From positions 4,836,001-4,900,000 of the forward strand of contig OZ176055.1 in NCBI GenBank assembly GCA_964247055.1: a DNA stretch of 64,000 nt, read 5' to 3'. Of this stretch, positions 6,320 through 61,478 are shown in pieces; within the stretch, counting starts at the first letter, position 1; every line of letters begins with the position of its first letter. Source of the DNA: Paragordius varius. Lineage: Eukaryota > Animalia > Nematomorpha. The notes below the pieces were generated by a model. It was given only the letters and a program-made list of their open reading frames with translations, did not search any database and was not told where the DNA came from. The position numbers were made by a program, and so were the translations under genes.

Positions 6320-6505
6320 GGTTTTTATCACAACTATGAGCTGAATGCAGACTCATTCGCTAAGGATAATATCGTTATAAACGAAAATTAGAAATTATTA
6401 CAATATCCAATACATACATTCTTGAACATTTTTATGAAACAGATATATCAAGCCCATTTAAGGTAAACTATAATATCACAAACAAAAATTCATCCAATAT
6501 ATAGG

Positions 6506-7058
6506 TTAAGGTATTTTTGATCTTTTATAACCATTAGGTATTAAATTTACAGTTATAACCATGCATTTTATTATCACTAAGTAAAATAATTTTGATAATA
6601 ATAATTTTTATTAAAAAAGCAAACCAAAAGCTTTTTCAAAGATTTTTTTTTAATTTTATAATAATGTAACGCCGATAATTATATTAAAATAATTTATATG
6701 ATTTTTAAATTAGTTTGTTTGTGAAAAATTTTGACTTATTTAAGGCCTGAAAATTTTGACCATCTAACCCAATTTACATCAGATTGTTTTTAAATCACTA
6801 ACTATTATTCGAAAGATACAGTTTTTCGCGCTATTTCGAGTGTTATATAATATATGGCTCTATAGCTAAAACTGTTAGTTTTAAAAATTTCGAGTTTAAT
6901 TATATATCGGGGCCAAAAAAATTCGATAAATCCTTATAAAAAGAAATTCTTAAGTGTTAGACCATTTTTTTCAGATATACTATTTATGTACTTTAATGAA
7001 ATAAATTATAAATTTATATGAATGGTAGTTTAAAAAAGTTAAAATTTGTTGTCTAGTG
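6506..7058 (+). repeat. Unclassified ~550-bp dispersed repeat, copy 1 (others at 22901-23429 and 46501-46995)
   Basis: Three co-oriented copies share long strings (e.g. cgaaagatacagtttttcgcgct, ttttttcagatatactatt). Two begin TTAA-GGTATT. Confidence 0.8.
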
Positions 7059-7319
7059 TAATATTTTTAGCAACAAATGCAATAGAGTGTAAAATAGAGT
7101 TGAAAGAAATACAGACATAATATCCCATTTTCCAAAAAAAGTTTTCACGGTCAATTGAAATTTTATACCAAACAATATAAACGTTTTTATAGTCAATAAA
7201 AACATTTTATTAACACTTATATATTAAATATGGTTTAAAAAATATTTTTGCCATATTTTAATATTTTAATGGATAAAAAAATTACAAAAAAGGATATAAT
7301 TTCGTTCAAAAGATAATAC

Positions 7320-7419
7320 CCCTATGAGTAAACAATTCCTTCAATATCTGTTCTCCGGAAGTAATTACAACTGATGATTCAGGACTCAGGCAAGACAATA
7401 AATCATTTATATATTGAAC
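7320..7419 (-). CDS. NAGS: NAGS exon 8 (VQYINDLLSCLSPESSVVITSGEQILKELFTHRG)
   Basis: 100 nt, tag| and |gtatta; ends in phase 1 within the Gly codon, as I recall for the human exon boundary. Confidence 0.85.
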
Positions 7420-10400
7420 CTATATGATATTTTATATAAAAAATATAAAATAATCAAAATATATTTTCTCAAAAAACCTTTGAAATATTTAATAATGTCT
7501 CGAAATATAACAATCTTCCGGTTAAAAATTAATTAAAGATAAAGTTATTGTAAATCATGATCATCATTAAAAAGGTGATTTGGCGTTAATCATTGAGAGT
7601 ACATTATAATTGAGATTTGACTATTTCTATATTCATAAGCGCTCTATTGCTAATGTTTGCGTAGTATAATATCTAACAGATCTGGAGGTTTCGTATAAAT
7701 TTCTTTATTGTTTGTCTTCTCGTCTTTCTACATGACCCCCTTTGTAATCGGAGAGTTCTACACATTGTTTATGGGTTTGAGATTAAGCATATGGTTTGGG
7801 TTAATACATTAGGTGTAGCTCAACTTGGATGGACGGAGAACAAAATTTTGTTGGATTCAGCGTATAAAGGTTTTGATTGACTTGTTTTTAACATCGGTCA
7901 GATTTCTGGCCAGTATCTAAGGATGGGACGGATAGCTGCTTTGTAAATGGCATTCTGTGTGTAACTTAAAAAATTAATTATTTATAATTATTTACAACGA
8001 GCGGTGTTTATTCGTTTGTGAATTTCGTTGCTTGATAGCGGGTTTCGCCCCCAGCTGATATCAAATCAGTTATGCAGCAGAGGTTTACTGTTTTTATATT
8101 AAAAGGTTCGAATAGGTTGAATGTAAAAACATTGAAATTATCTTCCATACATCCTGAGAATATGTCATTTTATCATAGCATTTAAAAGATTTAAGGTTAC
8201 CATTTTTTGGGTGGCCATAAAAAACAAAAACGCATGAATTTGATTTGACTATTTTACATATTCTGCGCAGATTATTAGAGTAAGCAGCCATTATTTTATT
8301 CTTGAAGATATTTACTTTACGCCCGTAATTTTGTATATGTCTTTTCATAGACCAATTCTTGATAGGATGTCAATTTCATTTGTCAAAGTTATCATAAATA
8401 TCGGCATAAATATCAGATATTCCGGTTATCGGATCTATTGTTAATTCTACTAAAATAATATTAAAAAGAGTAGGTCCTAATAAAAATCCTTGGTGGAGTC
8501 CATTTTTTCTTAAAAACTTTACATAATTCGTATGTTGTATTACTTGAGGTGTTTGATTGATTGCAGTTATGGCCATTCTAGAATACCCTGACTTAATTCA
8601 AGTGTGTTCTCTTGGGATCGAGTAAAAAGCGCGTCCCACACCAAGGAATGTATAGTATAAAGTGATATTTTAAATGTGTGCGTTAATATCTATCGTAATT
8701 TAAAGATAGCGTCATTCATACCAATAATTGAACCCGCATCGCATTTCGTTTAATCGTATTTAGAGTAATATTTTAGTGAGTATTACCTTTTCACATATTT
8801 TCATGCCATCATCATCATCATTTTTATATGGATTCGCCATAAAATGGTGGTTCACCCGTTATTTTTTTCTAATCTTTTCTTGATCTGACTAACTTTAGAA
8901 TTATAAAAGATGCGAGGTCTTTATTAATTTTATTATTCAGTTTAATTTAGGTTATAAAGCGTCTTCTTTTGTGTATATGGAGATAACATGGTTTCCTAGT
9001 CATTGGTATTTTTCCATCCCTTATTATAACATTATTAAAGCGTTTTGCGAGATATGTATTTGCATATTGGGTATCTATCGATTTGAACATGTCACCAGTT
9101 GTAATTATTCGTATTAAGTAAGGCGGTATTGATAAATGATTTTGTAATTTTCAGTGAAGCTTTGAAAAGTTGACGTAATAAAAATTTGAATTAAACTTAA
9201 CATTCGTGAGTTGACAAAAACCAGCTTTTAACTTCGGCTGGATCATTGGTTATTTTTACTGATTCTGGCGCAGTTGATATAATTTTAATTTTAGTTATCG
9301 TTCTTTCGCAATTTTCATAGCTTTTTGATATAATTTTAATGGTGTTTTTTTTTAAAACCTTATTTTAAATGTTTTTTCACGTGTTATTCCATCAGAATCG
9401 ATATTTTTGGATTAATTTTTTGTGTTTTTTTCCAACCTATTAAAAGGATCTATTAGTTTTTGCGCACTGCCTTCTTTTCTTTTTGTATAAATAACATGTT
9501 ATTGCTATTTTATGTATGATTTATAAATATAGATTTTTAATGATCTGGTTTAATCAATTTAATACATGTATTTTTTTCGAAAAATTTTAGGTTTTAAAAC
9601 ACGCATTACCGATAGTATTCCAAATTAAAACTTATATGCCTTAAAGGTTACCGAAATGCATCATTTTAATCAAAAAAAAATATTTAGTAAATGTTAACCG
9701 AAATTGGTGTAAAACAGTGGTGTATATTTAAATAGAAACTAGTATATAAATAATATAAATAAATTTACCATAGATATTGCATTCTTTTGATCAAAATATG
9801 AATGCATCATATCAAGATTTAATTGCGACTGTATATTTGCTAAATCTTCTGGCAAATGGACCAAAGGAACAATCTGTTATATGTCATTATATAAGATATG
9901 TCAGTTTTGGGTTAAAAATCTGTTTGAATATTTTTATATTTTTGGATAGTAAAACTTACCAGTTTGAGAATCCAATAAAAAGAGGAAGATTTTGCACATA
10001 AGGAAAATAAACCCGAAATCTGATTCAAAAGAATTTTGATTATAACTTTATGAAATTATATGCCTGTGTTTTAATAATTTTGGATATTTAAAAAGTAAAG
10101 CGTCTAAAACAACAGATTTTCGAAATAATTGACTATGGGGGGTTTTAAGATGCTTAATATTCGACAAAAATATAATTTTGCAGAAACGCTAGTTTTTATA
10201 CACTGGCTTTTCCTTTTGTATTAAAATAGGATAAATACCTCATAATGTTGTATCATAAATAAAATATTCAGAGGCGTACTAATAATATTAACAATATTTA
10301 TTTTTAAATGAGACTATAAAAAATAACTATGAAGGATGTATGAAATATTACTAATTTATAATTATTATAAAAAACTAATCTTTAACAAACCTTATTATAT

Positions 10401-13400
10401 ACTATTTTAACAATATTATTAAATACGATTTAAACAATATTACAAATATTTAAATTTAATATGAAAACAATTCATATTGCTTTTAATTGTCAGTTTTTCG
10501 CCAAGATCTATGCATATTATATGCACATTTTTTTCAAATACAAAAATTAGAAATAAAAATATTTTTTAAAGTAGAAAAGATGTTTTAAAAAAAATCCAAA
10601 AAATCCATTGATCCATCCTTTTTTTAGGTCCCAAGGTGTCTGGGTTACCATGCACCAACTTTCTGAACAATGTCCTATCAAATACTTGTTCAGGTTCAAT
10701 ATTGAAATGTAAGAGATCTTGAGTCAACTGTTTGGACCATGTGAGTTTAGGACGACCTTTTCTGTTTGGGCCGGGTATGTTTAAATGTGGTATTTTTTGT
10801 ACCCAGTTATCCAAATTCATACGTTGAATCCGTAATATCGCAATCGGTAGCGCTGAGTAAACAGAAATATGGGTTCTATTTCTTAGATGGTATTCTCAAA
10901 AATATTGTTGCAGATTTTTAGCATGTGATTTTCAGCTCTAATAAGCCATTTAAGTCTGTTGCTGTAAGGGCCCAGGTTTCTATAGCGTATTTCATAGCTA
11001 GATTTCTCCCATTTTTTTAAATTTTTAACTTATAATTCGATTGATATTTTTATTAGTTAAAATATATTTTGATTAATTGACTTAACCCATCATTGACTGA
11101 TTCTATGAGAAATGGCATCCCTCAAAGATCCATCAGATGCTATATAATCGCCAAGATATGAAAAAAATTTCTAGTTTTCATTGAAATTTAAAATACGAGG
11201 ATTAGCTATTGGCAGTGGTATCGATAAAATGGTTATTAATAATTTCCTTTTATAATGGAGCATTTTTTATGGACCAATTTTTGCATTTTGTGCAACAAAA
11301 TGAGTTTAGTTTTACTTCTGTGCAAAATGGTCATGAGAACTTGATGATGTTGTGCTCATCTGTGATTAGGATTTCAGTTTTCATTGTATTGATCTTAAGA
11401 CCGTGTTTTGGTAATTGATTCAACCACCTTATATATTACGAGTATTGAAATAATTTCCGCAGTAATAAAGATCGGCTGCATAGAGAATCATATGGCAATC
11501 CTTCTCTTAGTCTTTTGTGATGTAGTATAGTATGGATATAAAAAGAAGAGGGCTTAAAATACACCCCTGATGCAACCCGGTATTAATAATGATATATTCT
11601 GAATTTCTAGCAGGTGTAAGAACACATCTGATTGTGTTGGTGTAAATTAACATTCTTTAATTTATATACATCTACGTTGTTGTAGCACAGTGAATCTATT
11701 CTTAGTATTCTAGGTACTGAGTCGTAAGCCTTTTCAAGTCGACAAAGCGGTGGTATAGTTTAATATTTTTTGCTCGGTATTTATCTTGTAATTGTTAAGG
11801 AGGAATATTGGATTAATTGTGCTTTTTTCGCTGAGGCAAATTGATTGGATTAATTAAAATGAGCAGAGCTATAATTTTTCAAGCATGGTTGAAAAATATC
11901 AACCCATGCTTAAGAAGTTTAAGGGCCTGTATGAGGAACAGTTTAGTCCTTTATTTTTGAAGTGGGAAATATAATGCTTTTTTCCCAGTCTGTAGGTATT
12001 TTAATTTCAACTATTTTTTCCCAATCTGTGGGTATTTTAATTTCAACTATTATTTTGTCAAATAAATTTGTTAAAAGCATGGAAATATTGGGTATTAATT
12101 TTATGATATCAAAACATAGTTCACTAGGCGAAGCCTTGTTTGATTTTATTTGGTCTAAGGCAATTTCGATTTCTTGTATTGTGAATGTCCTTAATGGGCC
12201 ACAACAGGGATCTCTATCAGAATTTATGATGGGTATTAAAATGTTGTTGAGATTTTGTTCCATATATTTTTGCCATATGCTTTCGATTCTGGTTGTATTT
12301 GTAAATTAATATTATTATTATTATCTTTTATACATTGAATTATTGGTATATCTTTTTTGTTATTATTCTAATGTTTCATATATTTGAAAATTTTATAATC
12401 TTGGATTTTCTTTTTAAATTTATCAGCAGTTTTAGCCTTATCATTCATTAATCTTGATTCCTTTTCTACCTTTTTGTGTGTTTTTAATACTCAGCATTGT
12501 CGCATTCTCTTTTCGAATTTTTGCATTTTTTATACAAACGCGCTTTTTCTTTAAGTAATGGCTCAATTGCATCGTCCCACCACCATTTCCTTTGGAACTT
12601 ACTCTTTCTCTTACCACACCATTTCTTTCTGTTTCAATAGCATTGCTCCTTAAACTGTGCCAGGAGTTTTCAACGTTTAGATTCAATGTTTAAATCTCTG
12701 GTTTTTAGCTCTTATGTATAAATAGTCTTTGTTTAGTATTATTATTTAAAAGCCTTGAATTAAATTTGAAAGTTCATGTTAAAATATTATGATGTGAAGA
12801 ATTATAAAATGGTTAATTTACCAGATATTTTCGGTTATGTTGCCTTGTTAGGATGTAGTTTTTTATTGCCAGGAGTGTATGTTATCAATTTATTTTTGCT
12901 TTTATTAACAAAGTATCTACTAATTGTAGCCGCTGAGCTGTACAAAATTCTAGAACATTTTCCCCTTCTTTGTCCCAATTATCAAAGTTGTATCCTCCAT
13001 GTATACCAGAAAAGCCTCTGCTTCCAACATGTGCGTTTAGATCTCCTCCAATCATCGTACCGTCAGTTTCGGGATTTATGAAACATATTTGATAAAGGTC
13101 ATCTCAAAAATCCAGCTATTTATCGAACAAGCCTTTTTGGGGTGCATATACTAAAATTATATTGAGGATCGACTTGTTATATATCATTCGAGATTGAGTT
13201 AGCATATCGCTGCGTAATCTGATTAGGTTTTGTCGATGGGTCTCTTTCGTAATGGCGACCCCAGATTGTCATTTGCCACCTTGGTATAATGAATATCCAT
13301 CAAAGTTTTCATATCTGCATTTTTTATGGAGTTTATATGTTTAAACTTAAGATACGCACCGTATCTATCCATTGCTTATTTCATGTTCCAACATTCCAGG

Positions 13401-15027
13401 AGCCAATTTTAAAAGACTCCGATATAGTTGGAAGTTTTTTTTCGATTCTTGTATCCTTCATTTTTCATTGTGTTGTCCCGGTTTATTGTTTTTGAATTTT
13501 GATAATTTGTAAGTTTAGTAGCATTATCATAAATATATATGTTATCATTTTTATTAATATTATGATTTCGATTTGATATTAAGTTTTGTTAATCATTCGT
13601 GTTTATAAGTCGTTTATTCATGGTTATGCAATTGAGACAAGATTTTACCGATTATATGCCCTCATAAACCAACCCTTTCAACTCAGAGGTGAGAGTACAT
13701 TATTCGATGTACCATAGAGAATGTATAAAAAGACGACGATATTCTAAAATCGATCTCATCCGTTGGCCTTAGACAGTGTGTAAGTTTCCGGACATCACCA
13801 CGCGGAGGTGGACGTAGGATTAGATGTCTCTCCAAAAAAATAACCTATATTAAAATTGATTTATAAGTATATGGTGCAAAGATGCATTTTCAATGATAAG
13901 ATTTGAGAAAACGCAAATTTATCAAGTACCTTTACCTCACTTATAGTTATATTCATACGACCTAGTGTACGAAAACAAAATTTAGATTTTGGTTAACAAA
14001 AGAATTTAATTATTTTTTATTATTTTAACAATATCAATAGGTAGATATTTCCAGCAATTCCATATTTAGCACTTAAAATTTTTAAGCACCGTGTAATATA
14101 AGAATTATTGAGACATAAAAGTATATGTGCATTGGATAATTGATTTCACAAATCCTACCCTAATTATATACATTTAGATTAAATATAAATGTCGCGTTCT
14201 GATTAATATTTGTTGAAATGCTTAATTTTACCTTTTGAAAAGTGTCGCGCAATCCACCAGTATTGTTCAAAAATAATACCTTTAATGGTTTTAGATCTGA
14301 ACTCATTTTAAAAAGAAGCTGAAATGGATTCATTAACAACATTTTATTAGAATAATCAGCATTTATTCCTAATATTGGTATAATATTCATGCTAAAAATT
14401 GTATATAATATACCGAAAACACCATTTAATTTTTTCATAATTAGAGTACAAATTAGATCTGAAACTAAAAATATGTAATTACTCATTGGTTGCGATTAAT
14501 CTAGGTTTCACTCTATATAAACTTGAATCCAAAAAAGATCTACTTTGTAAGTTTTGAATATAAAATTCTTCTGCAAGTTTACGACTGTTGCATTCAAAAA
14601 TATTTTTATTCTATCATAAAATAAATTTTACAATAGCCAATGGTAAATTATAATTTCCATGAACTACTATTAGTTTCATGCCATTTCTTTGCAAAAAACA
14701 AAAACTAGATATTGAGTTTTTAAGCTATTATAATTTATAATGTAACTTGATATTTATCTTCGAAAATTTCGCTTGATAAATAGGCTATTGCAAAAGGTTT
14801 TTTCGTGTTTCCAAACCTTTGAAAATACCTCAACCAAAAACGCCCCTCTTTTGGGTCAGCTTCATACTTAAAATTGTATTATAGTAAACTTCCAATAAAA
14901 ATCGCTGTAAATCTGGAATGTAAGAATCATGATAATGGCGAAAACAGCACTTGTTATTATTATTAAAACGATAATAACGCATGGTATTCCATAGCCTACA
15001 TAAGACCAGTTGCTCCGATATATACAT
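7320..15027 (-). CDS. NAGS: N-acetylglutamate synthase, vertebrate-like, mitochondrial (5' part; NAT-domain exons lie left of the window)
   Basis: Hand-spliced exons: 15027-14890, 14866-14747, 14724-14632, 14610-14483, 14464-14414, 14391-14232, 9873-9769, 7419-7320. All introns are GT-AG and phases are consistent, giving 298 codons with no stop. The peptides match recalled human NAGS motifs: DLQRFLLE/DIQAFLNQ, KPFAIA/KPFAVI, FLQRNGMKLIVVHG/FLQRMDMKPLVVLG, WCFRMNIIPIL/WCLESGSIPIL, LKPLKVLFLNNTGGLRD/LRPTKIIFLNNTGGLRD, VHLPEDL/VNLPADL, DLLSCLSPESSVVIT..ELFTHRG/DVLSRLPHHSSAVIT..ELFSNKG. The Arg-rich N-terminus resembles a mitochondrial targeting peptide. Confidence 0.9.
7620..8580 (-). mobile_element. 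Decayed LINE RT/C-terminal fragment
   Basis: GLHQGFLLGPTLFNII...IYAD and IYKAAIRPIL motifs; similar to 27320-28230. Confidence 0.7.
8806..9470 (-). mobile_element. Internally deleted LINE fragment with (TGA)n tail
   Basis: catcatcatcatcat tail at ~8808; RT domain-0-like text (TGDMFKSID...DGKIP). Confidence 0.5.
9769..9873 (-). CDS. NAGS: NAGS exon 7 (IVPLVHLPEDL...AISM)
   Basis: 105 nt, cag| and |gtaaat, phase 0/0; matches VLSNVNLPADL. Confidence 0.85.
10605..13829 (-). mobile_element. Decayed RTE-like LINE in NAGS intron 6
   Basis: APE remnant (SWNVG, 13300-13400), RT remnants (11500-12260), PHD remnant (~11300), GPNRKGRPKLTW C-terminus, possible TSD tccaaaaaat at both ends. Same family as 40712-42990. 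Confidence 0.85.
13755..13829 (-). ncRNA. HDV-like ribozyme (copy 3)
   Basis: P1 AGACATC/GATGTCC (first pair mismatched), P2 GTCC/GGAT, P3 ACC/GGT, L3 TCCGCGT, GG, P4 CTTA..TAAG, J4/2 GCCAAC. Confidence 0.8.
14232..14391 (-). CDS. NAGS: NAGS exon 6 (MNIIPILG...LNNTGGLRDTFQK)
   Basis: Carries the strongest NAGS motif, FLNNTGGLRD; donor AAG|gtaaaa. Confidence 0.93.
14414..14464 (-). CDS. NAGS: NAGS exon 5 (...YEKIKWCF)
   Basis: 51 nt, phase 2/2; followed by a 22-nt intron. Confidence 0.8.
14483..14610 (-). CDS. NAGS: NAGS exon 4
   Basis: 128 nt open frame ending in phase 2; followed by an 18-nt (or 24-nt) intron. Confidence 0.8.
14632..14724 (-). CDS. NAGS: NAGS exon 3 (LKNSISSFCFLQRNGMKLIVVHG...)
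   Basis: 93 nt, phase 0/0; followed by a 21-nt intron. Confidence 0.88.
14747..14866 (-). CDS. NAGS: NAGS exon 2 (YEADPKEGRFWLRYF...KPFAIA...DKYQ)
   Basis: 120 nt, flanked by 23-nt and 22-nt GT-AG introns. Confidence 0.85.
14890..15027 (-). CDS. NAGS: NAGS exon 1 (MYISEQ...DLQRFLLE)
   Basis: ATG at 15027 with an in-frame TAA two codons upstream; phase-0 donor gtttac at 14889. Confidence 0.75.
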
Positions 15028-15348
15028 CTTTTAACACTTCATGACCTCTTCAATTTTTGTCCTAGTTGACATATTAGGGTAATGTGACCAGATAGGCTGT
15101 TTTTCACAGTACAGTACTGGATTTTCAGAAAAAATACTGCCACTGTACTGCGCCCACTTTTGTACTGCTTTTTGAAATTGAAAAAAATAATTATTTATGA
15201 ATATATATATTAATTACCTTTAATTTATTCAAAAAAATTATTTAAAATTTGATATAGTACCCTCTGTAAAAATCACCCCATAATTTTTTAGTTTTTGCGG
15301 TAAAAAAGTAAGATTGGCCTATTGGTTAATATTTTATTTTCTGCTCGA

Positions 15349-17561
15349 ACTATACATAAAATGCGGTCAACCTCGTATGATAGCCTTTCGCGCAGTGGCA
15401 CAACTATAAATCTCGGACTCTACCGTAAGATTCAGGCTAATGGCGCATTCACTCAGGGTTTCCGCAAAAAGAGGTGCCTCAAAATTTAAAACTAACAAAA
15501 TTAATTTATGATATTTTAATAAATGTTTGATCAAGTTTAGAAAATTCATTTTTTGTTAAAATTATCAAAAGAAAATTATATAAAAAATTGTTATTCCCGT
15601 AACATATTATATATAATCATATTTATAAAAATGGAAAATTCTGGCTTTGTGATCTGTTTCCGGAAAAATGGTATCCAAATATCGAAAAAATATAATCATT
15701 AATGAATGCCTCGACAATAGCTTCGCCTTTTTTTGAATTAGGCCCCAAGTTGGGGCTTACCCCGTGTAAAAAACGGGTTTTTGAAAACAGAAGTCCACAA
15801 AAATCGTGACTTTGAGATAATTTCCGGAGAAGGTATTGGACCATTTAATTTTAAATATGATTTTTGATTATTTATTTTCAATTGCGCCCAACATAGTCGG
15901 CCCGCTTTTTTAATTTAGGCCCTCTTTTTACCCGCTTCTCCCGTAAAATTCTATTTTTTAAAAAAACCAAGTCCATAAAAATAATTTTTTGATTCTTTTT
16001 TTGCCCAAGGTATGAGATCGTAAAAATTCAATAAGCATTCCACGTTTTCCTTCTTAAAAGGCAAAAATTTTAGTCAAGCGTTTCTTTGATGATAGCTGCT
16101 GGGTAAGGAGCTACCCGCTAAAAACTGATCCGTCATGAGGCTTTGTGATCTGTATCCGTAAAACCGGTAGACCCATTTAAATACAAATATAGAAAAAATA
16201 TAATCATTAAGGAATGGTCCGACAATAGCTTTGCCCTTTAATTAGGGCCCAGTTCGGGCCCACCCCGTGTAAAAATCGGTTTCTTTTGAAAACACAAGTC
16301 CACAAAAATCGTGTCTTTGAGACAATTTTCCTGGAGAACGTGTTGGACCATTCAATTTTAAATATGATTTTTGTTTACTTATTTTCAATTGCGCCGAACA
16401 TGGTCTGCTGGCTTTTTTAATTTAGGCCCTTTTACCCGCTGCCCCATAAAATGCCATTTTTTTAAAAAAAAACCAAGTCCATAAAAATAATTTTTTGATT
16501 TTCCCCCAATGTATGAGACAGTAAAAATTCAATAAGGATTCCAGGTATTCCTTGTTAAAAAGCAAAAATTTTATTTAAGCGTTTCTTTGATGATGGCTGC
16601 TGATTAAGGAGCTACCCGCGAAAAAGTGACCCATCATATCAAAATAGCGTGCTTTTGGGGATCAGGCCATATGAGTCAATAGCTGTTCAAAATATTACCT
16701 ATAACAAAGCAAAAATTTAGATCGTGCGGTTTTATAAAAGTAGCCGTTAATTAGGCCCTTCACGCTCTGAAAATGCGCCACCATAGAATGATTTTTTTAA
16801 TTTTGATGCAATTTTTCCAAAAACTAATAAGAGCATATAGAATCAATCATGATTCCAAGTATTCTCCGTATAAAGGCAAAAATTTTAATCAAGCGCTTTT
16901 TTTGTATCAGCCTCTGAGTAGGGAGCTACCTGCCAAAAACTGCGCCGCTATATAGAAATTACGTTGTTTTGGAACTATTTTAAAGAAAACTTATGCCATA
17001 TGAGCTCATTTAAAGTTCGAAATATTACCCGTAACTAGGTAGAAATTAACGTCAGGCCTTTTTTATTAGCCGTTAATTTAGGGCCATATGCCCTAATAAG
17101 CCATCATATAACGATTATTTAGTGTTGAGGTATTTTTTTGCGTAACCCTTGAGACGATGGTCTCAGCGCTTTTTCCATATAGGCCTATGGTCAGGGGTCT
17201 ACTGGTTTAAAACTGAGGCGCCATACAAAAATGGTGTGGCTTTGGAGATAATTTTCAAAAAATTTAAGAAGCCATACGAGTTCAATAAAGGCTTAAAATA
17301 TTACACAGAAAAAGGTAAAATTATAATATAGCGGTTTTTTCCGTTAGCCGTCAATTTGGGGCCTTTCCACCAGTAAACAATATATTCGTATGTATGCAAC
17401 ATTTAGAAACTCCTATGAGATCATAGCTATTGAATAATGTTTCGAAATAATCCACATATATGGATCATTTTATTGATCCCTTTTTTTCAAATAGTTCCCC
17501 CCCTTCCCCAAAAGTCCGATGGACTTCCCCGGGCTGCGTAGCAGCACGAGATTTACGCTAG
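15349..17561 (+). mobile_element. Non-autonomous Helitron-like element with internal tandem duplication
   Basis: 3' end shows a GCTGC-GTA-GCAGC hairpin (17533-17545), a spacer, then CTAG (17558-17561) followed by T. The 5' end is inferred from (A)CTATACATAAAA at ~15349 and is less certain. Confidence 0.7.
15643..16630 (+). repeat. Tandem duplication, two ~496-bp units
   Basis: Units start ggctttgtgatctgt at 15643 and 16139; a third partial copy lies at ~16870-16940. Confidence 0.9.
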
Positions 17562-17719
17562 TTTATTATATATGGCATATAATTTCGAAATAACTTTTTT
17601 TTCGTATTAAATTAAGAGTTTACGTTTTCTATACTGATTAGGTGGGAGGTATGACATTACTTAATTTTTTCCCAATTAATTTTCATTAGTATTCTTATTT
17701 TTTGCATAAACAATTGATA

Positions 17720-18310
17720 TATTTTGTTGAAGCTTACTTCTAACGTATTTGAAGCATGATGGAAACGGTATAACGCTCTAAGATATAATAAAACCCTTTT
17801 TCTTAATAAGTCGATGATGTTGAACAATCAGAATTTTAAATTTAAAGGTTTGTTTGCTTACAAATTTTGGTGAATTTTTGTAAAACAAAATTTTTACATA
17901 AATTTGAAAACGAACGAATATTTTAACCAACCTCTTTTTGGGGAATTAGCATTATCGAATTATATGTATAAAATGTATAACACCGTTTATTCGTTTTCAT
18001 CATGCTCAAAGCTTCCACAAAATCTTGCTAAAAATTATATTTTTAAAAGTATGCATTTTTTAAAAAATATATTTAGCAGTCAAAATTTAGCACATATTTA
18101 AATTGCAAAATGTTTTCGCGTTTATTTAATAGAACAGTCCATTTTAAAAGAGCCAAAAATTTGGGACTTTCAGAGCCCACATCCAAAAATTCAACCCTAA
18201 AGCTCCATGATAATTCTGATATTTTCCTATCAGAATATAATTTCATCTGGATATTTTTTTGTGGAAAGCATGAATATACCACACCGATGGTGTAAAAGCA
18301 GGCAAAGCAT
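17720..18310. repeat. Partial copy of the intron-9 foldback family
   Basis: Shares cattttaaaagagccaaaaa..gggactttc and ttgttgaagct with 55320-55830. Confidence 0.6.
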
Positions 18311-18775
18311 GTTTTAATTTTGTACTCCGTTAAAGTTCAAAATATCTAGTCACATTATATTAGGGTTATTTTATAACGCAGAGCTCATTGTAAATAAACT
18401 ACTGTTGAATATTTAGTTAAAATTTACCAGAAATATTACTTAATCAGACTGGTATCTGAGAGATAAATAGCCAATATGAGATGGATCATGGAGAAAGACA
18501 AATTTTAAGACCCATATGACGTTTATGGTATTTTCCAGGCTTTTGATTCTATACAATATATTCTTCTACTTTCATTCTTAAAAGAGCTAGAAGTTTCAAC
18601 TTATTTAATTAACAAAAATTTTCAAATTACTCAAGTTCGACTGCTATGGTTTCTAAAAATCATAGAGCTGATCCCTGCATGGTGAATGTGGGGCTATGTC
18701 AGGGTTGAGTCTAATCACCTATTTTGTTTATGGCATATCTCTAATGCATAATGAGAAACTTACTCGATACATTGG

Positions 18776-21026
18776 TAGGGTGACCAGATTTTTTGAAGGA
18801 TAAAGCGGGACAAATCTAGAAAGGGGGGGTACAACAAAAAAATTTTATAAAAAAAATTTATTGTAGTATTTTTTTATTTTTAACACAAATACATTATAAA
18901 TATAAAAAAAATAATTTATACCTTGGTATATTTTTATCTGAGTAAATGCGTTTTAGCAGATTGTCATCATTTTTTAAAATATTGTAGAAGTCTTCACAAG
19001 AATTTGTCAAATTATATTTGACAGATAAAATGGCCTTTAAAGTTTCAACATTTAAATTTGATTTTTCCGATGTCCACACCAGATTTACTGTGAAAAAACG
19101 CGCTCAGTAGCAGCGTGGTTCCAGGTAAAGATAGTGCAAATTTTACAATTTTAAAATATTATTGTATGGAACAGAGTTTGTTTCAAAATTATGAAATATT
19201 TCTAACCATTTCTTTTCTATTGTATTTTTTCTCTTGTCCATAATTTAAGTTTTTTCATTAATATATTTTTTAACTAATGATACTTCAGAAAAAGGATCAT
19301 TATTTGAAAGGTTACTTTTTGGGAATTTTTGGGAGATGCAGAGATCAAATGATTTCTAAACATCGCACCAATTAAATTCTGGTTTTGATTTATCCACTGA
19401 AAATGATCAATTTTATTAAATTGCACCGTCCAGTCCAAATAATCTTTACAGTTTGTATAAAACATTTTTATATGATCCAGGATATCTTGGCGATTTATTG
19501 GTATAAAATATTTTCTAAACTTTCTTGACATTGGAATTTTAGGTTACTAACTTCATTGGCTACTTCGATTGCCAAAGTTTTGTCGCCTTCTATCAATTTA
19601 ATTACATTTTGAAAGAGAGAAGCTTGATTATGTAGGAACTCTAACCATATTTTTGAAGAATCACTTTCAAAAAAATATCCAAAGTTGTAGGACATTTGTA
19701 CTGTGACAAAAAAATAGGATTTTAAATATTTTTTAAAAATTTTTCGATAGCTGGCATAAGAGCAAACCAACGAGTTTTACAATATCCAAGCATTTTTTGA
19801 TATTGAATTTCGCATTTTCACAGAATTCCTTAAGCATTTCAACGCTTACCGTGTATGTAAAAATAGGAATATATCTTAACAACTACATTTTCCACATCTA
19901 GGTGTACCAAATCAGCAGCTGTTTGAATAGCGTTGTGTATTAAATGCGTTGCATCCAACGTCAATAATGTTTTGATTAAGATTATCTGCTAATTTATTTA
20001 AATTATTTTTTGTTCACCTCCTTGCTTTTCCACCGAAGTTCGTATTGGTGTTTTCAGCGCAATATGCAATTTTGTCTTTTAAATTATTTTTTCTAGAACA
20101 TTCATTATTGAAGTAAAAATTATGTCGGAATTTGTACCGGGTAGAGAAATAAAATCTAAAATTTTAAATCTACTCCGGTTTCTGATCAAAATATCTTATT
20201 AAAGTAGGAAATATTTGCTTCCTGATTTGATACATCAGAGTATGTCGATATTAAATTAATTTTCAGCAAATTTTTTTGTATTTCAGAAAATGCATGTGGC
20301 GAAAGGACATTGCATACAATGGCTTCAGCCTTTGTACGGACACGAATAACCTGTGAGGTACAATCCATAGATCTAAAGGAAGTGATTAACGGCGTGAAAA
20401 GATAAAACGCCTTCGGCTAGAGACAAATTCTTTTCTTCCTCTCCAAAAGCGGTTTTTCGATAAAAATCGCTCATTTTGTAAGATGATGCCGCCATATCTA
20501 TTTTTATGTTTCTGTTTTTCTATATGCTTTTTAATATCATGCTTGCCGCCATGTGCTAGAGTGAACCCCTCGCATAAAGCATTTAACAAATAACTCATTC
20601 TTTGTTTTTTTGAGAAAAGGAAATTCTTTCATTAAATCATCGTTAAATTTACAACCTCTTTTTGTTCTCATATTTTTAAACTATTAGTGTATAAAAATAT
20701 TATATTACCTTAATTTTCTGGAGTAAACGTATAAGCTACCGATTTGTGGTATTAATTTTTTTTTTGATAATTTTAGCAGCAGGATTAGGAAAAGTGTATA
20801 ATCATATGATATAAATTCGAAAAAAAATATTTTTAATTTAAAAATAAAAAATTTTAATTAAAATTGATATAGATTTAAAGATAATATTGATGATAAAAAA
20901 TTTAAACGTATAAAAACAGTGTATTTAAAAAGATTTTTTTTATACAATCGTGAAAAAGCGGGACATTTTTAAAACGCAGCGGGACGCGGGACAAAGTGTG
21001 AAAAAGCGGGACGTCTGGTTAACCTA
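18776..21026 (-). mobile_element. hAT (Blackjack-like) DNA transposon with frameshifted transposase
   Basis: Termini TAGGGTGACCAG...CTGGTTAACCTA; subterminal GCGGGAC repeats; C-terminal dimerisation text (ERVFS..WTSEKSNLNVETLKAIL). No clean TSD. Confidence 0.85.
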
Positions 21027-22190
21027 TTAGGAGCCTTTTTGCTAATGGAATGGGCATACATATTATTTTTAATTGATTAATAATTTGAAATAAATTTATG
21101 AAGAAAACTCTTTACATGTTTAATGATAACCTTTAGCGTTTATGAATTTATAATAAAGATTTGACAATTATAAACATTCATATTTAATTAGATAAAAATA
21201 TACCTTCATTTACTTTAAGATATTTTTGTCAATTAAATTTTAAAGCGATAATCATTTTTTCATCAACTTAGGAATAAATATAACATAGTGTGCAACAAAT
21301 TTCCTTATGATATCACACCCAGCATCTTTATATGAGCGTTGTGACATCATAAAAAAGTACAATGATAAAAAAATTGACAATGTAGAAAAAAATTCCCACT
21401 TTTTCCACATATGGTTATAATCGGAAAATATCAAATTTGCATAATGCGTTATCAAAGATATTAAAAATTATATATGATATAAAGAATATTGATTAAATAT
21501 TGTTTAAAAATTTGGCAAAATATGAATAGATATATTTTGAATAAATATCAATTAAGTTAATTTAAATTTAGCCCTTATATTAGCAACATAAAAAATATTC
21601 AAAGCAAAATAAAATTAAAAACAAATTTTTTTATATTAATTTTTGTATTAGCATTCTAGGGTATAATTTTTTACATGAAGAGTTCACATAAGAGGATTTC
21701 GAAATCTTTTGCAGAATAAAACTGTCAAGTTAGACCGAAGTTGTTTCACCCCTGTTGATAGTAATATTATATTTTTGTGGCAAAGCATGATACTGAAAAC
21801 GAGAAATATTTTGCTACCTACTTTTAATTACTTCCACCCTTACGGGGAAAAGGCTTACCCTATTTTTCGGTCAAGGCTATTTTGTAAAATTTCTGAAACA
21901 TTGGGTTATTTTCATTATTAAGATAACAATATTACAATACATGAAAAAAATGAAGCAATTATACAATATTGATTATGTTCTGCTGCATTGCAATTATTAT
22001 ATATTATATATATATATTTATTTACGACCCATAATATTAAAATAGTTACTACTTACTACAGTTACATGTTTTAATGGCTTTTTAACCGCATTCCTTAAAT
22101 TTAGAAATGTTATAAAATATCTTTAGGTTAGGTCCCTATTTATTCTTGAAAAATTCTTGAAAGAGACAGTTTATGGCTCAAACTTTAAAT

Positions 22191-22362
22191 CAGTGTTAGT
22201 AAAACTGCCGCCCTAAAGTTCGTTTTTATGGCCCTGAATTATTATTTAAATTTTGTGATATAATCATATTAGTATAAAATGCAAGTTTTTATAGAAATAT
22301 GTTTCAGTTCTTGAGACAAGATATTTTTTGCGCCCCTTAAAAATTTTTGTTGAGTACCATTG
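22191..22362. mobile_element. Short hAT MITE
   Basis: CAGTG...GAGTACCATTG termini; TSD CTTTAAAT/GTTTAAAT (7 of 8 match). A relative ends at 54305. Confidence 0.7.
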
Positions 22363-23429
22363 GTTTAAATGATTTGATTTTATTAACACTTCGATTCGAA
22401 TTGGGGTAACTAGACAACAAATTTTTCTTGAGTGACCGCTCTCACGAGTGAAAACATGTAATGTAATAATAATAAAAAAAATAATAATTCCACCTAAAAT
22501 TTTGTATAATTTGATTTTTTATGATTATGCGCCCTCTTTATCAAAATATTAAAAAATGTTTTTCCTTGAAAATGTAAAAATGCCCATTTGTAAATAATAA
22601 AAACTCTATAAAATTACTAATATGTTTGGCATCGATAGTTAATATTGGACATATGAAGCGACAAACCGACCAACGAGAGCGTTGTTCTTAATTATTATAT
22701 TGTAAAAACTAATGGATGAAATTAGCATGAATGTCTAAAAAAGGTAATACAAAAAAGTTTTTTTATAAAACACTTATTTAATGCTTTTATCTCATTCAAA
22801 ACAATTATTTTTAATTTTTTTGTTTTCAAAAATTACCGTCATACCAATATTAATTATTTTCTTTAGTAGGCATATAAAATTTCAAAGATAGAAATATAGT
22901 TTAAGGTATTCTTGATCTTTTATAGACATTAGTAAATTTACAGTTATAGCTATGCATTTTAGTATCCATTAGGTAAAATAATTATGATAATAATAATTTT
23001 ATAAAAGCAAAAAAACTTTTTCAAAGATTTTTTTTATTTTATACTAATGTAACCCTAATAATAATATTAAATTAATTTATATACTTTTAGTTTGTCTATA
23101 AATACTTCTTACTTGGTTCAAAAATTTGACCATATAAACGCAAAAACCTTTAACATCAGATTGTTTTTAAATGACTAACTACCATTCGAAAGATACAGTT
23201 TTTCGCGCTCTTCCAATATGATATAAAATACATGGCCTCTATATCTAAAACTTTTAGTTATGAATATTTGGAGTTTAATGTTAAATCTGGGCCAAAGATT
23301 CTCTATAAACCCTAATTAAAAAACATTAAGTAGACCAATTTTTTTCAGATATACTATTGTAGTTTAATGAAATAAATTTTATATTCAAAATAATGGAACT
23401 AAAAAAAGTCCAAATTTGTGGTCTAGAGT

Positions 23430-23815
23430 TTTATATCAAACGAAGATTTGAAAATTTAAACAAGATTAATATCTAATCATTAATTTTAAGATATTTTCTT
23501 GAATCAAATAGCATTTATGTATTGTTCTTAAATATTAGCAGAGTTTTAAATATTTAAACCCTTTATATTCACCCAATACAGTTTATAGCATTAACATTTT
23601 TAAACCTAAATTATATGCATACATAGTCCAAAATAATTTTAAGCATATTTTTAAATCTGTCAAGTGTGCCCTACACCACACTTATATGATATCACCTCCG
23701 AATCAGGTTTTCTTGCTTTTCTGTTGTCTAATGTTTAATTTTTTTATCAACGGTAAGCAAGCCATCACTTAAGAAACTTGCAAGTCGTCAAAAATATTTT
23801 TTTATCACCCCACCT
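23430..23815 (-). mobile_element. Partial Harbinger-like MITE arm (another partial copy at ~24330-24500)
   Basis: Reverse complement of the left part of 32335-33360; ends ttttatcaccccacc. Confidence 0.65.
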
Positions 23816-24831
23816 TTAAAAAAAGTATATCAAGTATTTTTGATGAATTTTTTTATATTTCGATTCATTTATGTTGGTGCAAACTTTTGCCATGGTTTCA
23901 GTTCATTCCATATTTTTTAGATTATTTAATTTTAAACAGGTCTGGGGTATCTAACGACCCCAATTCGAATCGAAGGATTGAATGTATTGTTGTATCCAAG
24001 TGATGAACTGTTTTTATACGTACGAACTTCATTTGTGCGATATGTGTATATATTTTTTTGATAATAACAGTAAATACACTATTTATACCAAAAGAGTTTA
24101 CTTTGTTTTGAAGGTTTACGGAATTAAGGAATTCAAAATACTTTTAGATTCATTTTTAATATTAGCTAAGTTTTTCCAAAGATTTTGTTTTTTATCCAAT
24201 CAGTATAATAAAATAAATACCCAAAAATTATCAGATAAAATGTTTATTACTTCAACAAAAGTTTGTACATAAACACCATATTTACATATATAAATAATTT
24301 CCGAAAATATTTTTATTTATATTTTCAAATCTGTCAAGTGGGTTTCAACCACATTTGCAAAGTCATCAAGTTTTACTAGATCATATAATTTTATCAGCTC
24401 CGAACTTTTCTTGCTTGACATTCCGCTAATGTTAAATTTTATTACATCAAAGCAACTGCCTTGAAAATCTTGCAAGTCAAATTAAAAATACCATTTTACC
24501 CTATGTTTTGAAGCATATAAGGAATTATTATAATTTGGATAATGATGTACGTTTCATTCTCCTAAATTGTTAATAACACTTGGATTTATACTTGGATACA
24601 ACACATTCATTTCAGTCTTTCGATTCAAATTGGGGTAGTTGGATACCCCAGGCCTGTTTAACTTTAATATTTCAAAAAATTTGGAGGGAATCGAAACCAT
24701 GACAAAAGTTTTGACTTATATAACATTAAACCAAAATATAAAAAAAATTATTGAAAATACTTGATAATACTTATTTGGTGAAACCCAAAATTAATAATTT
24801 AGTAAGCATCACATGTGATTACAAAACTTAA

Positions 24832-25389
24832 CACTTCGATTCAATTTGGGGTATTTAAATACCCAGACTAAATTTGAGTTAGGATTTTTAATAAACTACT
24901 GAAGGAAACGGTCCCAATTTAAATTTATGCTCCTCTAATAAAAATTATATAAATATGCTAAAATATCTAAATACAATTTTGTTTTGAAAAAAAAAGTTCC
25001 ATGTCAAACTACTTCGACGCCATTTTTATTTTACAAAATATTGCAAAATATCGTCCTCATTTAATTTTAAGGGTAAAATTATTACATCTAACATTGATTG
25101 AAATGGATAAACCGGTTTATTTTGTATTATTATTTAATTTTACCATTTCACACATATCACGTTGACGAAATTTTTACCTTTCGGTTTTATCTTAAAATAA
25201 GTAATATCAAGTATTTTTGAATAAAATTTTTTATATATTTCAGTTTATTAATGTTATAAAAGTGCAAAATTTTGCCATGGTTTGGTTTCCTTCCATATTT
25301 TTAAAAGAGTTTAATTTTAAACACGCCTGAGGTATCCAACTACCCCAATTTGAATCGAAGGACTAAAATGAATGTGTTGTATCCAAGTG
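24832..25389. mobile_element. piggyBac-like MITE, full copy 1
   Basis: TTAA|CACTT...AAGTG|TTAA; asymmetric ends with an internal inverted repeat CTTCGATTCAAATTGGGGTA separated by a spacer at one end only. Confidence 0.85.
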
Positions 25390-25684
25390 TTAAAAATAAA
25401 ACAAAATAAACCACTTTTTTTCTATCAATAGATGTTATTAAAAAATACCCTTATTTTTGCTCTAAAAATACGAGATTTAGCAAAAATATTGGGAAATAAA
25501 AATAGCGTTGATATAGTTTGATATGGAACTTTTTTGGCTTATATAATTAGAGAAACATAAATTTAAAATGGGACCGTTTTTATTAGTATCTTTTTAAAAT
25601 ATGAACTTAAATATAGTTTGGGGTATTTAGATACTTCAATTTGAATCAAAGTGGTAAAAGATTGTTCGTCCAGTTTTAAATATA

Positions 25685-25688
<4 letters not shown>

Positions 25689-25729
<41 letters not shown>
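25689..25729. repeat. (TA)n microsatellite
   Basis: About 20 TA units. Confidence 0.95.
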
Positions 25730-25737
<8 letters not shown>

Positions 25738-26090
25738 TATTACCCTATTAAATTAAAAAACGAAACATAATAGCATTCATTACAGTAACTAACCCCCATT
25801 CCAAGTCATAGATTTATATTTTCAGTACCTTACGGCTGGGTAGGTATTTTTGATTGATTGGCGGCTGCGGTTTTCTGTTGCCCTCTTTACTTGTTAGTTT
25901 TAATTGGATTTAGGCCAACACATATACGACTATTCAGAAAAAGTAATTGCGGATATATATATAGATAGTTTTCTTGTCTTTTTACCATAATATTTTTATT
26001 TTTTTACTCACTTATAAATAAATTAACTAAGATCACAATAAACAAATATAAAACGATATGACTATAAAAGATTACGAGAATTCGTTTTAA

Positions 26091-26660
26091 CACTTCGACT
26101 TAAATTGGGGTATCTAAATACCCCAGACTAAATTTAAATTAAAATTTTTATACTGAAGGAAACGGTCCCAATTTAAATTTATGCTTCTATCCTGATAAAT
26201 ATTATATAAATATGCCAAAATATCTTGATAAAATTTTGTTTTGAAAAAAAAGTTCCATCTCAAACTACATCGACGCCATTTTTATTTTGAAAAATTTCGC
26301 AAATCGGGTTCATTTAATTTTAAGGGTAAAACTAAAGCTTATTAATTATATAAATTACATCTAACATTGATAGAAATAAAAATAGCGGTTTATTTTATAT
26401 TATTTTTTAGTTTTACAATTTGACACATGTCACGTTGACTAAATTTTTACCTTTCAGTTTTAGCTCAAAATAAGTAATATTAAGTATTTTTGAATAAAAT
26501 TTTTTATATATTTCGGTTTATTAATGTTATAAGTGCAAAATTTTGCCATGGTTTTGATTGCTTCCATACTTTTTAAAGTATTTGATTTAAAAGAGGCCTG
26601 GGGTATCCAACTACCCCAATTTGAATCGAAAGACTAAAATGAGTGTGTTGCATCCAAGTG
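26091..26660. mobile_element. piggyBac-like MITE, full copy 2
   Basis: TTAA TSD at 26087-26090 and 26661-26664; highly similar to 24832-25389. Partial copies lie at ~22387, 23820-24002, 24577-24780 and 25490-25653. Confidence 0.88.
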
Positions 26661-26687
26661 TTAATATCCAAAGCATATTTTGCATAA

Positions 26688-61473
<34,786 letters not shown>

Positions 61474-61478
<5 letters not shown>

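What the first reader, a model, noticed from the sequence alone, without database searches (positions are those of the whole stretch)
7420..61347. Extreme intron bimodality suggests a once-compact genome re-expanding by TE insertion
Seen: six introns of 18-23 nt coexist with introns of 2349, 4358, >7300, 7340, 5114, 811, 3299, 6591, 3151, 504, 2435, 3633 and 287 nt. The large ones are mostly recognisable TEs (for example ~2650 of 3151 nt in SRP54 intron 7). Many positions match ancient animal introns as I recall them (SRP54 c.78, 255, 360, 485, 636, 785, 886, 973). Inference: ancestral introns shrank to about 20 nt and some were later inflated. One spliceosome must therefore handle a ~400-fold size range.
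Basis: partly seen in the sequence, partly recalled or inferred. Interest (0 to 1): 0.75.

Follow-up and report, generated by a model that had tools for sequence, protein, structure and literature searches.

The report
Tiny and giant introns side by side
Two ordinary housekeeping genes of an AT-rich, repeat-rich animal (probably a horsehair-worm relative) carry real-looking introns of only 18-23 bases next to transposon-filled introns of up to 10 kb, which puts the animal's minimal intron size below the roughly 30-base limit so far broken only by two other parasitic animal groups.

Summary
SRP54 (+ strand, 12 exons, 523 aa) has one 21-nt intron and ten of 287-7340 nt. NAGS (- strand) has five introns of 23, 22, 21, 18 and 22 nt, then 4358, 2349 and >7300 nt. 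All are GT-AG, and all six tiny ones are required by homology.

They lie at ancient intron positions. The 12 NAGS positions are those of Gordionus, where the introns are 115-6171 nt, and all 12 recur in at least one of two other animals. A cytoplasmic dynein gene elsewhere in the genome has at least eight homology-fixed introns of 25-32 nt.

Long introns are 28-84% young repeats (a lower bound). After masking they still keep 0.3-3.5 kb, and an 811-nt intron is single-copy.

So "ancestral introns shrank" is supported. "Long ones were once tiny and were re-inflated" is not shown. A minimal-intron peak shifted down to about 18-32 nt, plus a transposon-fed long tail, explains the data as well.

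The genome is not the ctenophore its assembly size suggests: it has no tektin and only two dynein loci. Its best relative is a horsehair worm. I obtained no RNA evidence. The scan has already noted this intron class in other windows of the same genome.

The parts
26721..61478 (+). SRP54 gene, 12 coding exons: 26721-26798, 26820-26996, 34337-34441, 39556-39680, 40492-40642, 43942-44090, 50682-50782, 53934-54020, 54525-54739, 57175-57331, 60965-61060, 61348-61478.
   Evidence: Pfam SRP54_N, SRP54 and SRP_SPB on single exons. Local model: 523 aa, no internal stop, all introns GT-AG. PDB matches for exons 1 and 2.
26799..26819 (+). SRP54 intron 1, 21 nt, GT-AG, phase 0, 90% A+T.
   Evidence: Two in-frame stops. 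The flanking exons match residues 1-26 and 27/28-85 of mammalian SRP54. The same position holds an intron of about 1.06 kb in another animal contig.
26997..34336 (+). SRP54 intron 2, 7340 nt, at least 52% repeat or TE-protein-like. Includes a 1.9-kb multi-copy element at 28258-30155.
34442..39555 (+). SRP54 intron 3, 5114 nt, at least 65% repeat. Holds an antisense LINE at about 34748-38058 with RT, PHD finger and endonuclease-like ORFs.
   Evidence: RVT_1 and PHD. Exo_endo_phos, below the family's cut-off. Copies elsewhere at 88-91% identity.
39681..40491 (+). SRP54 intron 4, 811 nt, no repeat detected, single-copy in the genome.
   Evidence: The whole-genome DNA search finds only itself. No tandem array.
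40643..43941 (+). SRP54 intron 5, 3299 nt, at least 77% repeat (LINE fragment at 40690-42957).
44091..50681 (+). SRP54 intron 6, 6591 nt, at least 40% clear repeat (about 56% with weak old repeats). Includes an abundant 1.7-kb element at 47451-49154.
   Evidence: 1628 first-look candidates genome-wide
50783..53933 (+). SRP54 intron 7, 3151 nt, 84% repeat (LINE fragment at 51090-53732).
54021..54524 (+). SRP54 intron 8, 504 nt, 8% repeat.
54740..57174 (+). SRP54 intron 9, 2435 nt, at least 68% repeat.
57332..60964 (+). SRP54 intron 10, 3633 nt, at least 28% repeat.
61061..61347 (+). SRP54 intron 11, 287 nt, no repeat detected.
1..15027 (-). 5' two-thirds of the N-acetylglutamate synthase (NAGS) gene. 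Exons: 14890-15027, 14747-14866, 14632-14724, 14483-14610, 14414-14464, 14232-14391, 9769-9873, 7320-7419. The remaining exons lie 3.1-10 kb before the window start (L002).
   Evidence: NCBIfam acetylglutamate kinase. Pfam NAT exons upstream of the window. tblastn with full-length NAGS homologues. Boundaries checked.
14867..14889 (-). NAGS intron 1, 23 nt, GT-AG.
   Evidence: The homologue alignment is contiguous across it. Orthologous Gordionus intron: 3433 nt.
14725..14746 (-). NAGS intron 2, 22 nt, GT-AG.
   Evidence: Gordionus orthologue: 606 nt.
14611..14631 (-). NAGS intron 3, 21 nt, GT-AG, with two in-frame stops.
   Evidence: Gordionus orthologue: 6171 nt.
14465..14482 (-). NAGS intron 4, 18 nt, GT-AG (24 nt with an alternative acceptor).
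   Evidence: The profile of 14 NAGS homologues prefers this model by 20 bits. Gordionus orthologue: 3729 nt.
14392..14413 (-). NAGS intron 5, 22 nt, GT-AG.
   Evidence: keeps the conserved W-C motif. Gordionus orthologue: 355 nt.
9874..14231 (-). NAGS intron 6, 4358 nt, at least 73% repeat or TE-protein-like (LINE remnants at 10569-13821).
7420..9768 (-). NAGS intron 7, 2349 nt. Only 4% masked, but it has a degenerate RT-like ORF at 8379-8597.
1..7319 (-). Window part of NAGS intron 8 (about 10.5 kb in all), 86% LINE or repeat.
   Evidence: RVT_1..

Best explanation
The window holds two divergently transcribed housekeeping genes, NAGS (-) and SRP54 (+). They belong to an AT-rich, repeat-rich animal without motile-cilia genes, probably a relative of horsehair worms.

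Ancient intron positions in these genes are filled by U2-type GT-AG introns of two size regimes.
1. A minimal class of 18-23 nt here, and 25-32 nt in a dynein gene. These introns are clustered, and in both window genes they sit next to the start of the gene.
2. Ordinary to very long introns, 0.3-10 kb.

Shown: the tiny ones are real interruptions of conserved reading frames, at positions where other animals have long introns.

Inferred: they arose by lineage-specific deletion down to the shortest length this spliceosome still accepts. This is the usual animal 'minimal-intron peak plus long tail' with the peak moved from 40-90 nt to about 20-30 nt.

Shown: the long introns owe a quarter to over four fifths of their length to young LINEs and other interspersed repeats.

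Inferred: long introns keep growing because they are large neutral targets. A 20-nt intron offers almost no place where an insertion would leave splicing intact. That sharpens the two classes without requiring that every intron was once tiny.
For: - Gene models and splice sites.
- Homology across the tiny introns.
- A further 21-nt NAGS intron outside the window, restoring an exact match to the homologue.
- Dynein introns of 26, 29, 26, 25 and 25 nt. In each case exactly one GT-AG pair has the length predicted by contiguous homologue coordinates. Introns of 32, 25 and 28 nt are fixed by AAA_6 profile and motif continuity.
- Conserved positions: 12 of 12 with Gordionus, and each also seen in at least one of two other animals.
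- Repeats: half of the window matches other places in a 314-kb sample. A 20-kb query gave 5935 first-look candidates, with copies 84-96% identical.
- Residual unique sequence in the long introns.
- CCT genes have only 67-5500-nt introns.
Against: - I have no RNA evidence for removal of any of these introns. No same-species transcript was found.
- The genome-wide length distribution was not measured. Only three genes plus rough CCT estimates were used.
- The repeat mask is a lower bound, so the residual lengths are upper bounds.
- The size-dependent target argument is an inference.
- Gordionus orthologues of the tiny introns themselves hold hAT and zinc-knuckle ORFs. The ancestor may therefore have had much shorter introns than Gordionus has now.
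Confidence: 0.6

Rival explanations
1. In a compact ancestor all introns shrank to about 20 nt. The present long introns are former tiny introns re-inflated by transposon insertions, and the genome is re-expanding.
For: - Long introns are rich in young repeats.
- A gene otherwise packed with 25-32-nt introns has one intron blown up to about 3.4 kb by a LINE that starts 6-43 nt after the donor.
- In Gordionus the orthologues of the tiny NAGS introns carry transposon ORFs, so inflation does happen in this clade.
- The genome (110.6 Mb) is smaller than the 200-300 Mb reported for studied hairworms (10.1101/2024.06.11.598342).
Against: - Residual non-repeat sequence of 287-3501 nt remains in every long SRP54 intron.
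- The 811-nt intron is single-copy.
- There are no tandem exon-edge arrays.
- About 210 nt of non-LINE sequence is left in the dynein intron.
- All six long NAGS introns are also long in Gordionus.
- A 20-nt intron is a very small and fragile target for a first insertion.
Confidence: 0.25
2. Position-dependent selection. Promoter-proximal introns are kept minimal because that benefits expression or co-transcriptional splicing, and distal introns are free to grow. The pattern is then functional, not historical.
For: The tiny introns are intron 1 of SRP54 and introns 1-5 of NAGS. Earlier scan notes on other windows describe the same 'tiny at the start, transposon-filled at the end' layout (unchecked leads).
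Against: NAGS intron 10 is also 21 nt. The dynein gene has tiny introns along its motor domain, far from the start. No expression data are available.
Confidence: 0.1
3. The short segments are not spliced. The genes would then be pseudogenes, the assembly would carry small insertions, or the segments would be removed or bypassed in another way.
For: I obtained no RNA evidence. Lengths under 30 nt have long been treated as annotation errors in animals (PMC13644364).
Against: - Every validated case has GT-AG ends.
- Lengths are mostly not multiples of three.
- Each removal restores a conserved frame exactly.
- The positions coincide with introns of other animals.
- All other exons of three single-copy essential genes are intact.
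Confidence: 0.05

Closest known systems
Ultra-short introns of myxobolid myxozoans (Henneguya salminicola, Thelohanellus kitauei, Myxobolus rasmusseni), PMC13644364
   Same: GT-AG introns of 20-30 nt in an animal, at conserved intron positions between conserved exons. Splice-site motifs are weak and A/T-rich. Short introns are flanked by short neighbours. The host is parasitic.
   Different: There the median intron is 22-27 nt and the genomes are described as compact, with relatively few transposons. Here tiny introns are one class beside many introns of 0.3-10 kb, half the window is repeats, and several genes (CCT) show none at the resolution used. The phylum is different (ecdysozoan-like, not cnidarian).
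Short introns of the dicyemid Dicyema japonicum (PMC6736024; compared in PMC13644364)
   Same: Highly shortened introns at conserved positions in a parasitic animal.
   Different: The dicyemid genome is reduced (title and abstract of PMC6736024). Kilobase transposon-filled introns in the same transcripts are not described in what I read.
The 'minimal intron' peak of compact animal genomes (about 47 nt in C. elegans, about 60 nt in Drosophila; from my own knowledge, not checked here)
   Same: A sharp lower mode at the shortest spliceable length plus a long tail, both within the same genes. This is the same architecture as seen here.
   Different: The lower mode here is 18-32 nt, below the roughly 30-nt floor assumed for animals.
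Orthologous introns of the horsehair worm Gordionus (GCA_954871325; locus L026)
   Same: The same 12 NAGS intron positions, a similarly AT-rich genome (27.7% GC in the locus), and transposon ORFs inside introns.
   Different: All 12 Gordionus introns are 115-6171 nt and none is tiny.

Membership tests
U2-type (GT-AG) spliceosomal introns | GT at the 5' end and AG at the 3' end | tested here: met
   All 11 SRP54 introns, the 7 complete NAGS introns plus the donor of intron 8, and 8 dynein introns.
U2-type (GT-AG) spliceosomal introns | Removal restores one continuous, conserved reading frame | tested here: met
   In five dynein junctions only one GT-AG pair has the length that homology predicts.
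U2-type (GT-AG) spliceosomal introns | Position shared with introns of other species | tested here: met
   NAGS: 12 of 12 with Gordionus, and each also in at least one of two other animals. SRP54 c.78 and c.255 in another animal contig.
U2-type (GT-AG) spliceosomal introns | Absent from mature mRNA | not testable with these tools
   No same-species transcript-derived protein turned up in three protein searches. An earlier scan note claims RNA support at another locus; I did not check it.
U2-type (GT-AG) spliceosomal introns | Branch-point adenosine and pyrimidine tract upstream of the AG | not tested
   The tiny introns are 83-90% A+T, so A residues are everywhere. No motif analysis was done on the roughly 15 cases.
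Animal lineages with ultra-short introns as defined in PMC13644364 | Introns shorter than 30 nt exist and recur | tested here: met
   Seven of 18-23 nt in SRP54 and NAGS, and seven of 25-29 nt (plus one of 32 nt) in dynein.
Animal lineages with ultra-short introns as defined in PMC13644364 | Median intron length below 30 nt genome-wide | tested here: inconclusive
   Not measurable here. Ten of 11 SRP54 introns, six of 12 NAGS introns and all 48 CCT estimates are 67 nt or more, while the dynein gene is mostly under 35 nt.
Non-LTR (LINE) retrotransposons, as the filler of the long introns | Reverse transcriptase ORF | tested here: met
   RVT_1 in ORFs at 3646-5106, 35190-35762 and 42506-42979 (the second scores just under Pfam's cut-off).
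Non-LTR (LINE) retrotransposons, as the filler of the long introns | AP-type endonuclease ORF upstream of the RT | tested here: inconclusive
   Exo_endo_phos matches at 20.7 bits, below the 24.5-bit cut-off, for 37350-37616. It matches at 32.3 bits for the LINE in the dynein intron.
Non-LTR (LINE) retrotransposons, as the filler of the long introns | Many dispersed copies, often 5'-truncated | tested here: met
   Dozens of scored copies at 84-96% identity with shared 3' ends and variable 5' ends.

The most novel reading that the evidence does not exclude
A third, independent animal lineage (a horsehair-worm relative, Ecdysozoa) has evolved spliceosomal introns under 30 nt. It has done so in a transposon-rich genome where the same pre-mRNAs also carry 3-10-kb introns. 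Intron miniaturisation would then be decoupled from genome compaction. The minimal intron length of the animal spliceosome would be an evolvable, lineage-specific parameter, with tiny introns clustered near gene starts.
Probability: 0.65. Interest if true: 0.75.

Novelty: new variant of a known kind. Interest (0 to 1): 0.62.

Why it matters
A paper of September 2026 (PMC13644364) states that animal introns under 30 nt are known only from myxobolid myxozoans and a dicyemid. It ties them to parasitism, small bodies and genome reduction.

Here the same extreme occurs in a repeat-rich genome, inside genes whose other introns are kilobases of transposons. Streamlining of genome size therefore cannot be the driver.

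There are three practical consequences:
- It gives a natural system in which one spliceosome handles an 18-nt and a 10-kb intron in one transcript.
- Standard gene finders and aligners, with minimum intron lengths of 20-30 nt or more, will mis-annotate this genome.
- Part of the reported loss of universal genes in such lineages could be an annotation artefact. That last point is my inference and was not tested.

Tried and rejected
1. Taxon. I first took the genome for the ctenophore Hormiphora californensis, because 110.56 Mb in 44 contigs equals that paper's abstract. I rejected this. There are only two dynein heavy-chain loci and no tektin, so the animal has no motile cilia. The best NAGS relative is Gordionus. 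An initial guess of a dicyemid or myxozoan was dropped for the same reasons.

2. Reference-free statistics. I counted GT..AG pairs between open frames against other dinucleotide pairs. The test was not discriminating, because every real junction allows many frame-compatible pairs.

3. A dynamic-programming exon chain for the dynein gene. It recovers six of eight validated introns, but it over-fits: it stitches LINE ORFs into the gene. I use it only as a rough indication.

4. Alternative NAGS models without the 18- and 22-nt introns, using one 58- or 64-nt intron instead. They score 20 bits worse.

5. RNA evidence. Three protein searches found no same-species transcript.

6. Asking whether the LINE-bearing dynein intron is 'tiny plus LINE'. 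The 5' flank is 6-43 nt but the 3' flank is about 210 nt, so the result is inconclusive and leans against.

7. None were found in SRP54.

Full report
WHAT THE WINDOW IS

The window is 24-35% G+C and lies at contig 6, 4,836,001-4,900,000, of a 110.56-Mb assembly in 44 contigs. Six-frame reading shows reverse-transcriptase ORFs and scattered exons of two conserved genes.

SRP54 is on the + strand and an N-acetylglutamate synthase (NAGS) on the - strand. Their start codons face away from each other across an 11.7-kb spacer, of which about 70% is masked as repeat.

WHICH ORGANISM

The assembly size and contig number equal those in the abstract of the Hormiphora californensis genome paper, and I first took it for that ctenophore. 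That is wrong.
- Whole-genome profile searches find only two dynein heavy-chain loci.
- They find no tektin. This excludes an animal built on motile cilia.
- The closest NAGS in a 1.84-billion-protein library is encoded in GCA_954871325. A preprint lists that assembly as Gordionus sp., a horsehair worm.
- That locus is 27.7% G+C, and the Gordionus genome paper gives 26.9% G+C and 64% repeats.

The NAGS exons are only 40-74% identical to the Gordionus protein, so the relationship is not close. 'Horsehair-worm relative' is my best reading, not a determination.

THE OBSERVATION, SRP54

From window coordinates I built a 12-exon model: 523 aa, one open frame, all eleven introns GT-AG.

The 21-nt intron (26799-26819) carries two in-frame stops. 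It lies between an exon that matches mammalian SRP54 residues 1-26 and one that matches residues 27/28-85.

THE OBSERVATION, NAGS

Pfam did not recognise the main exon, NCBIfam matched it only weakly, and the word search found nothing. For that reason I used the one large protein search, on a NAT-domain exon that lies before the window start.

The full-length homologues align exon by exon. The alignment is contiguous across the 23-nt and 22-nt introns, and the 21-nt intron is forced by two in-frame stops.

For the 18- and 22-nt introns I compared models locally against a profile of 14 homologues.

The '>7300' intron is about 10.5 kb in all. A sixth tiny NAGS intron, 21 nt, lies outside the window, and its removal restores an exact match to the homologue. 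All six tiny introns of the finding are therefore supported.

IS THE TINY CLASS GENERAL?

A cytoplasmic dynein heavy-chain gene on contig 5 has exons that abut one another.
- Three introns of 32, 25 and 28 nt are fixed by AAA_6 profile coordinates and motif continuity.
- Five more, of 26, 29, 26, 25 and 25 nt, are fixed by homologous protein fragments whose coordinates run on across the gaps. In each case exactly one GT-AG pair has the predicted length.
- A rough exon-chaining model suggests some fifty more, but it over-fits.

By contrast, about ten genes with a Cpn60/TCP1 domain gave 48 intron estimates of 67-5500 nt and none shorter. In-frame tiny introns hidden inside profile matches cannot be excluded there. 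Tiny introns are thus a real, recurrent and clustered class, not the rule for every gene.

THE LONG INTRONS

Half of the window matches other places in a sample of only 314 kb of the genome. A 20-kb query had 5935 first-look candidates genome-wide. Scored copies are 84-96% identical, so many insertions are young.

I combined DNA repeats with protein-level similarity to repeated ORFs. The masked fractions of SRP54 introns 2-11 are at least 52, 65, 0, 77, 56, 84, 8, 68, 28 and 0% (the 56% for intron 6 includes weak old repeats). That leaves 3501, 1803, 811, 755, 2873, 508, 465, 789, 2625 and 287 nt.

These residuals are upper bounds, because the mask is incomplete. Even so:
- A 2.3-kb residual piece has only weak, old repeat matches.
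- The 811-nt intron 4 has no second copy anywhere in the genome.
- No tandem arrays fill these introns.

ORTHOLOGOUS INTRONS

The Gordionus NAGS gene has 12 introns of 3433, 606, 6171, 3729, 355, 1269, 1144, 2554, 779, 499, 115 and 598 nt. The genome under study has introns at the same 12 places: 23, 22, 21, 18, 22, 4358, 2349, about 10,470, about 1,620, 21, about 4,060 and about 590 nt.

Each of these 12 positions recurs in at least one of two further animals, one on a scaffold I believe to be of the limpet Lottia (from memory). There the introns are 166-2836 nt.

For SRP54, fragmentary gene calls from other eukaryotes break off right after residue 85. One contig has exon 1 and exon 2 about 1.06 kb apart, split exactly after residue 26.

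The tiny introns are therefore shrunken ancient introns, not new insertions. Two Gordionus orthologues of tiny introns contain hAT and zinc-knuckle ORFs. Inflation by transposons also occurs in that lineage, and the ancestral lengths remain open.

THE RE-EXPANSION STORY

I tried one direct test. The single long intron of the otherwise compact dynein gene holds a young LINE. Copies elsewhere align from 6-43 nt after the donor to about 210 nt before the next exon. The pre-insertion intron was therefore probably about 0.2 kb, not 20 nt, although an unnoticed small exon in that flank cannot be excluded.

Four observations together give no positive sign that the long introns were ever tiny: the unique residuals, the single-copy 811-nt intron, the long Gordionus orthologues of the long introns, and the CCT genes.

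A minimal-intron peak moved down to 18-32 nt, plus a transposon-fed tail, explains the two classes. Size-dependent exposure to insertions would add to the contrast. This is the familiar architecture of compact invertebrate genes with an unusually low floor.

LITERATURE

PMC13644364 (September 2026) states that introns under 30 nt are known in animals only from myxobolids and Dicyema japonicum. Neither the Gordionus genome paper nor a comparative hairworm preprint mentions introns. Searches for ultra-short introns in other animal groups found nothing relevant. The library holds open papers only. Cunha et al. 2023, on hairworm genomes, could not be read.

EARLIER WORK OF THIS SCAN

Several other windows of the same genome were already noted for 20-32-nt introns, often at gene starts and followed by transposon-filled introns, and other agents also read the genome as hairworm-like. 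One note claims RNA support at another locus. I treated these as leads. My own tests reach the same reading for this window.

LIMITS AND OMITTED STEPS

The joined, spliced protein models of SRP54, NAGS and dynein were never typed or sent to any search tool. Exons were searched one by one by reference. Joined models were assembled only inside local scripts from window coordinates, for frame checks and for one local profile comparison.

No searches with a whole spliced protein were done. For that reason SRP54 orthologues of relatives, and same-species transcripts, were out of reach of the length-limited protein search.

None of the contigs fetched looked human. L030 differs from the mammalian SRP54 chain at two exon-1 residues, and I read it only for its ORFs.

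I could not measure a genome-wide histogram.

Noticed in passing
G000 contig 2, 3,000,001-3,100,000 (loci L016-L025): Every 5-kb bin of this 100-kb block is 41-47% G+C, against 27-30% in the other sampled regions. One 10-kb piece has a single ORF of 120 aa or more and no large tandem array. This is an unexplained compositional island, which could be an isochore, foreign DNA or a mis-scaffold.
   Followed up: partly
window 14392-15027 (-) and 26721-26819 (+); L002 about 5040-5060: The tiny introns are the first intron of SRP54 and the first five of NAGS (plus the tenth). The transposon-filled ones lie further downstream. Earlier scan notes describe the same polarity in other genes.
   Followed up: partly
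whole genome G000: Only two dynein heavy-chain loci and no tektin match. The genome seems to lack the motile-cilium toolkit. Its size and contig number coincide by chance with the published Hormiphora assembly.
   Followed up: yes
L002 about 735-780 (-), NAT-domain exon of NAGS: A 45-nt in-frame insertion (15 residues) relative to all homologues, without stops and without GT-AG ends. It is either a true insertion or a non-canonical intron.
   Followed up: no
window 35190-35762 (-): The LINE ORF has a PHD finger directly after the reverse-transcriptase domain.
   Followed up: no
window 47451-49154 and 28258-30155: Two non-coding elements of 1.7-1.9 kb are very abundant. The 6.6-kb intron holding the first gave 1628 first-look candidates, and scored copies of both are 82-91% identical. 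Pfam found no domain in their ORFs.
   Followed up: partly
L026 17374-17763 and 23402-23791 (Gordionus NAGS introns 3 and 4): A hAT dimerisation-domain ORF and a zinc-knuckle ORF lie inside the Gordionus introns that are orthologous to 21-nt and 18-nt introns here.
   Followed up: partly
window 15028-26720: The divergent NAGS-SRP54 spacer is 11.7 kb and at least 70% repeat, so transposons are tolerated right next to both gene starts. This weakens a simple 'insertions are excluded near promoters' explanation for the tiny first introns.
   Followed up: no
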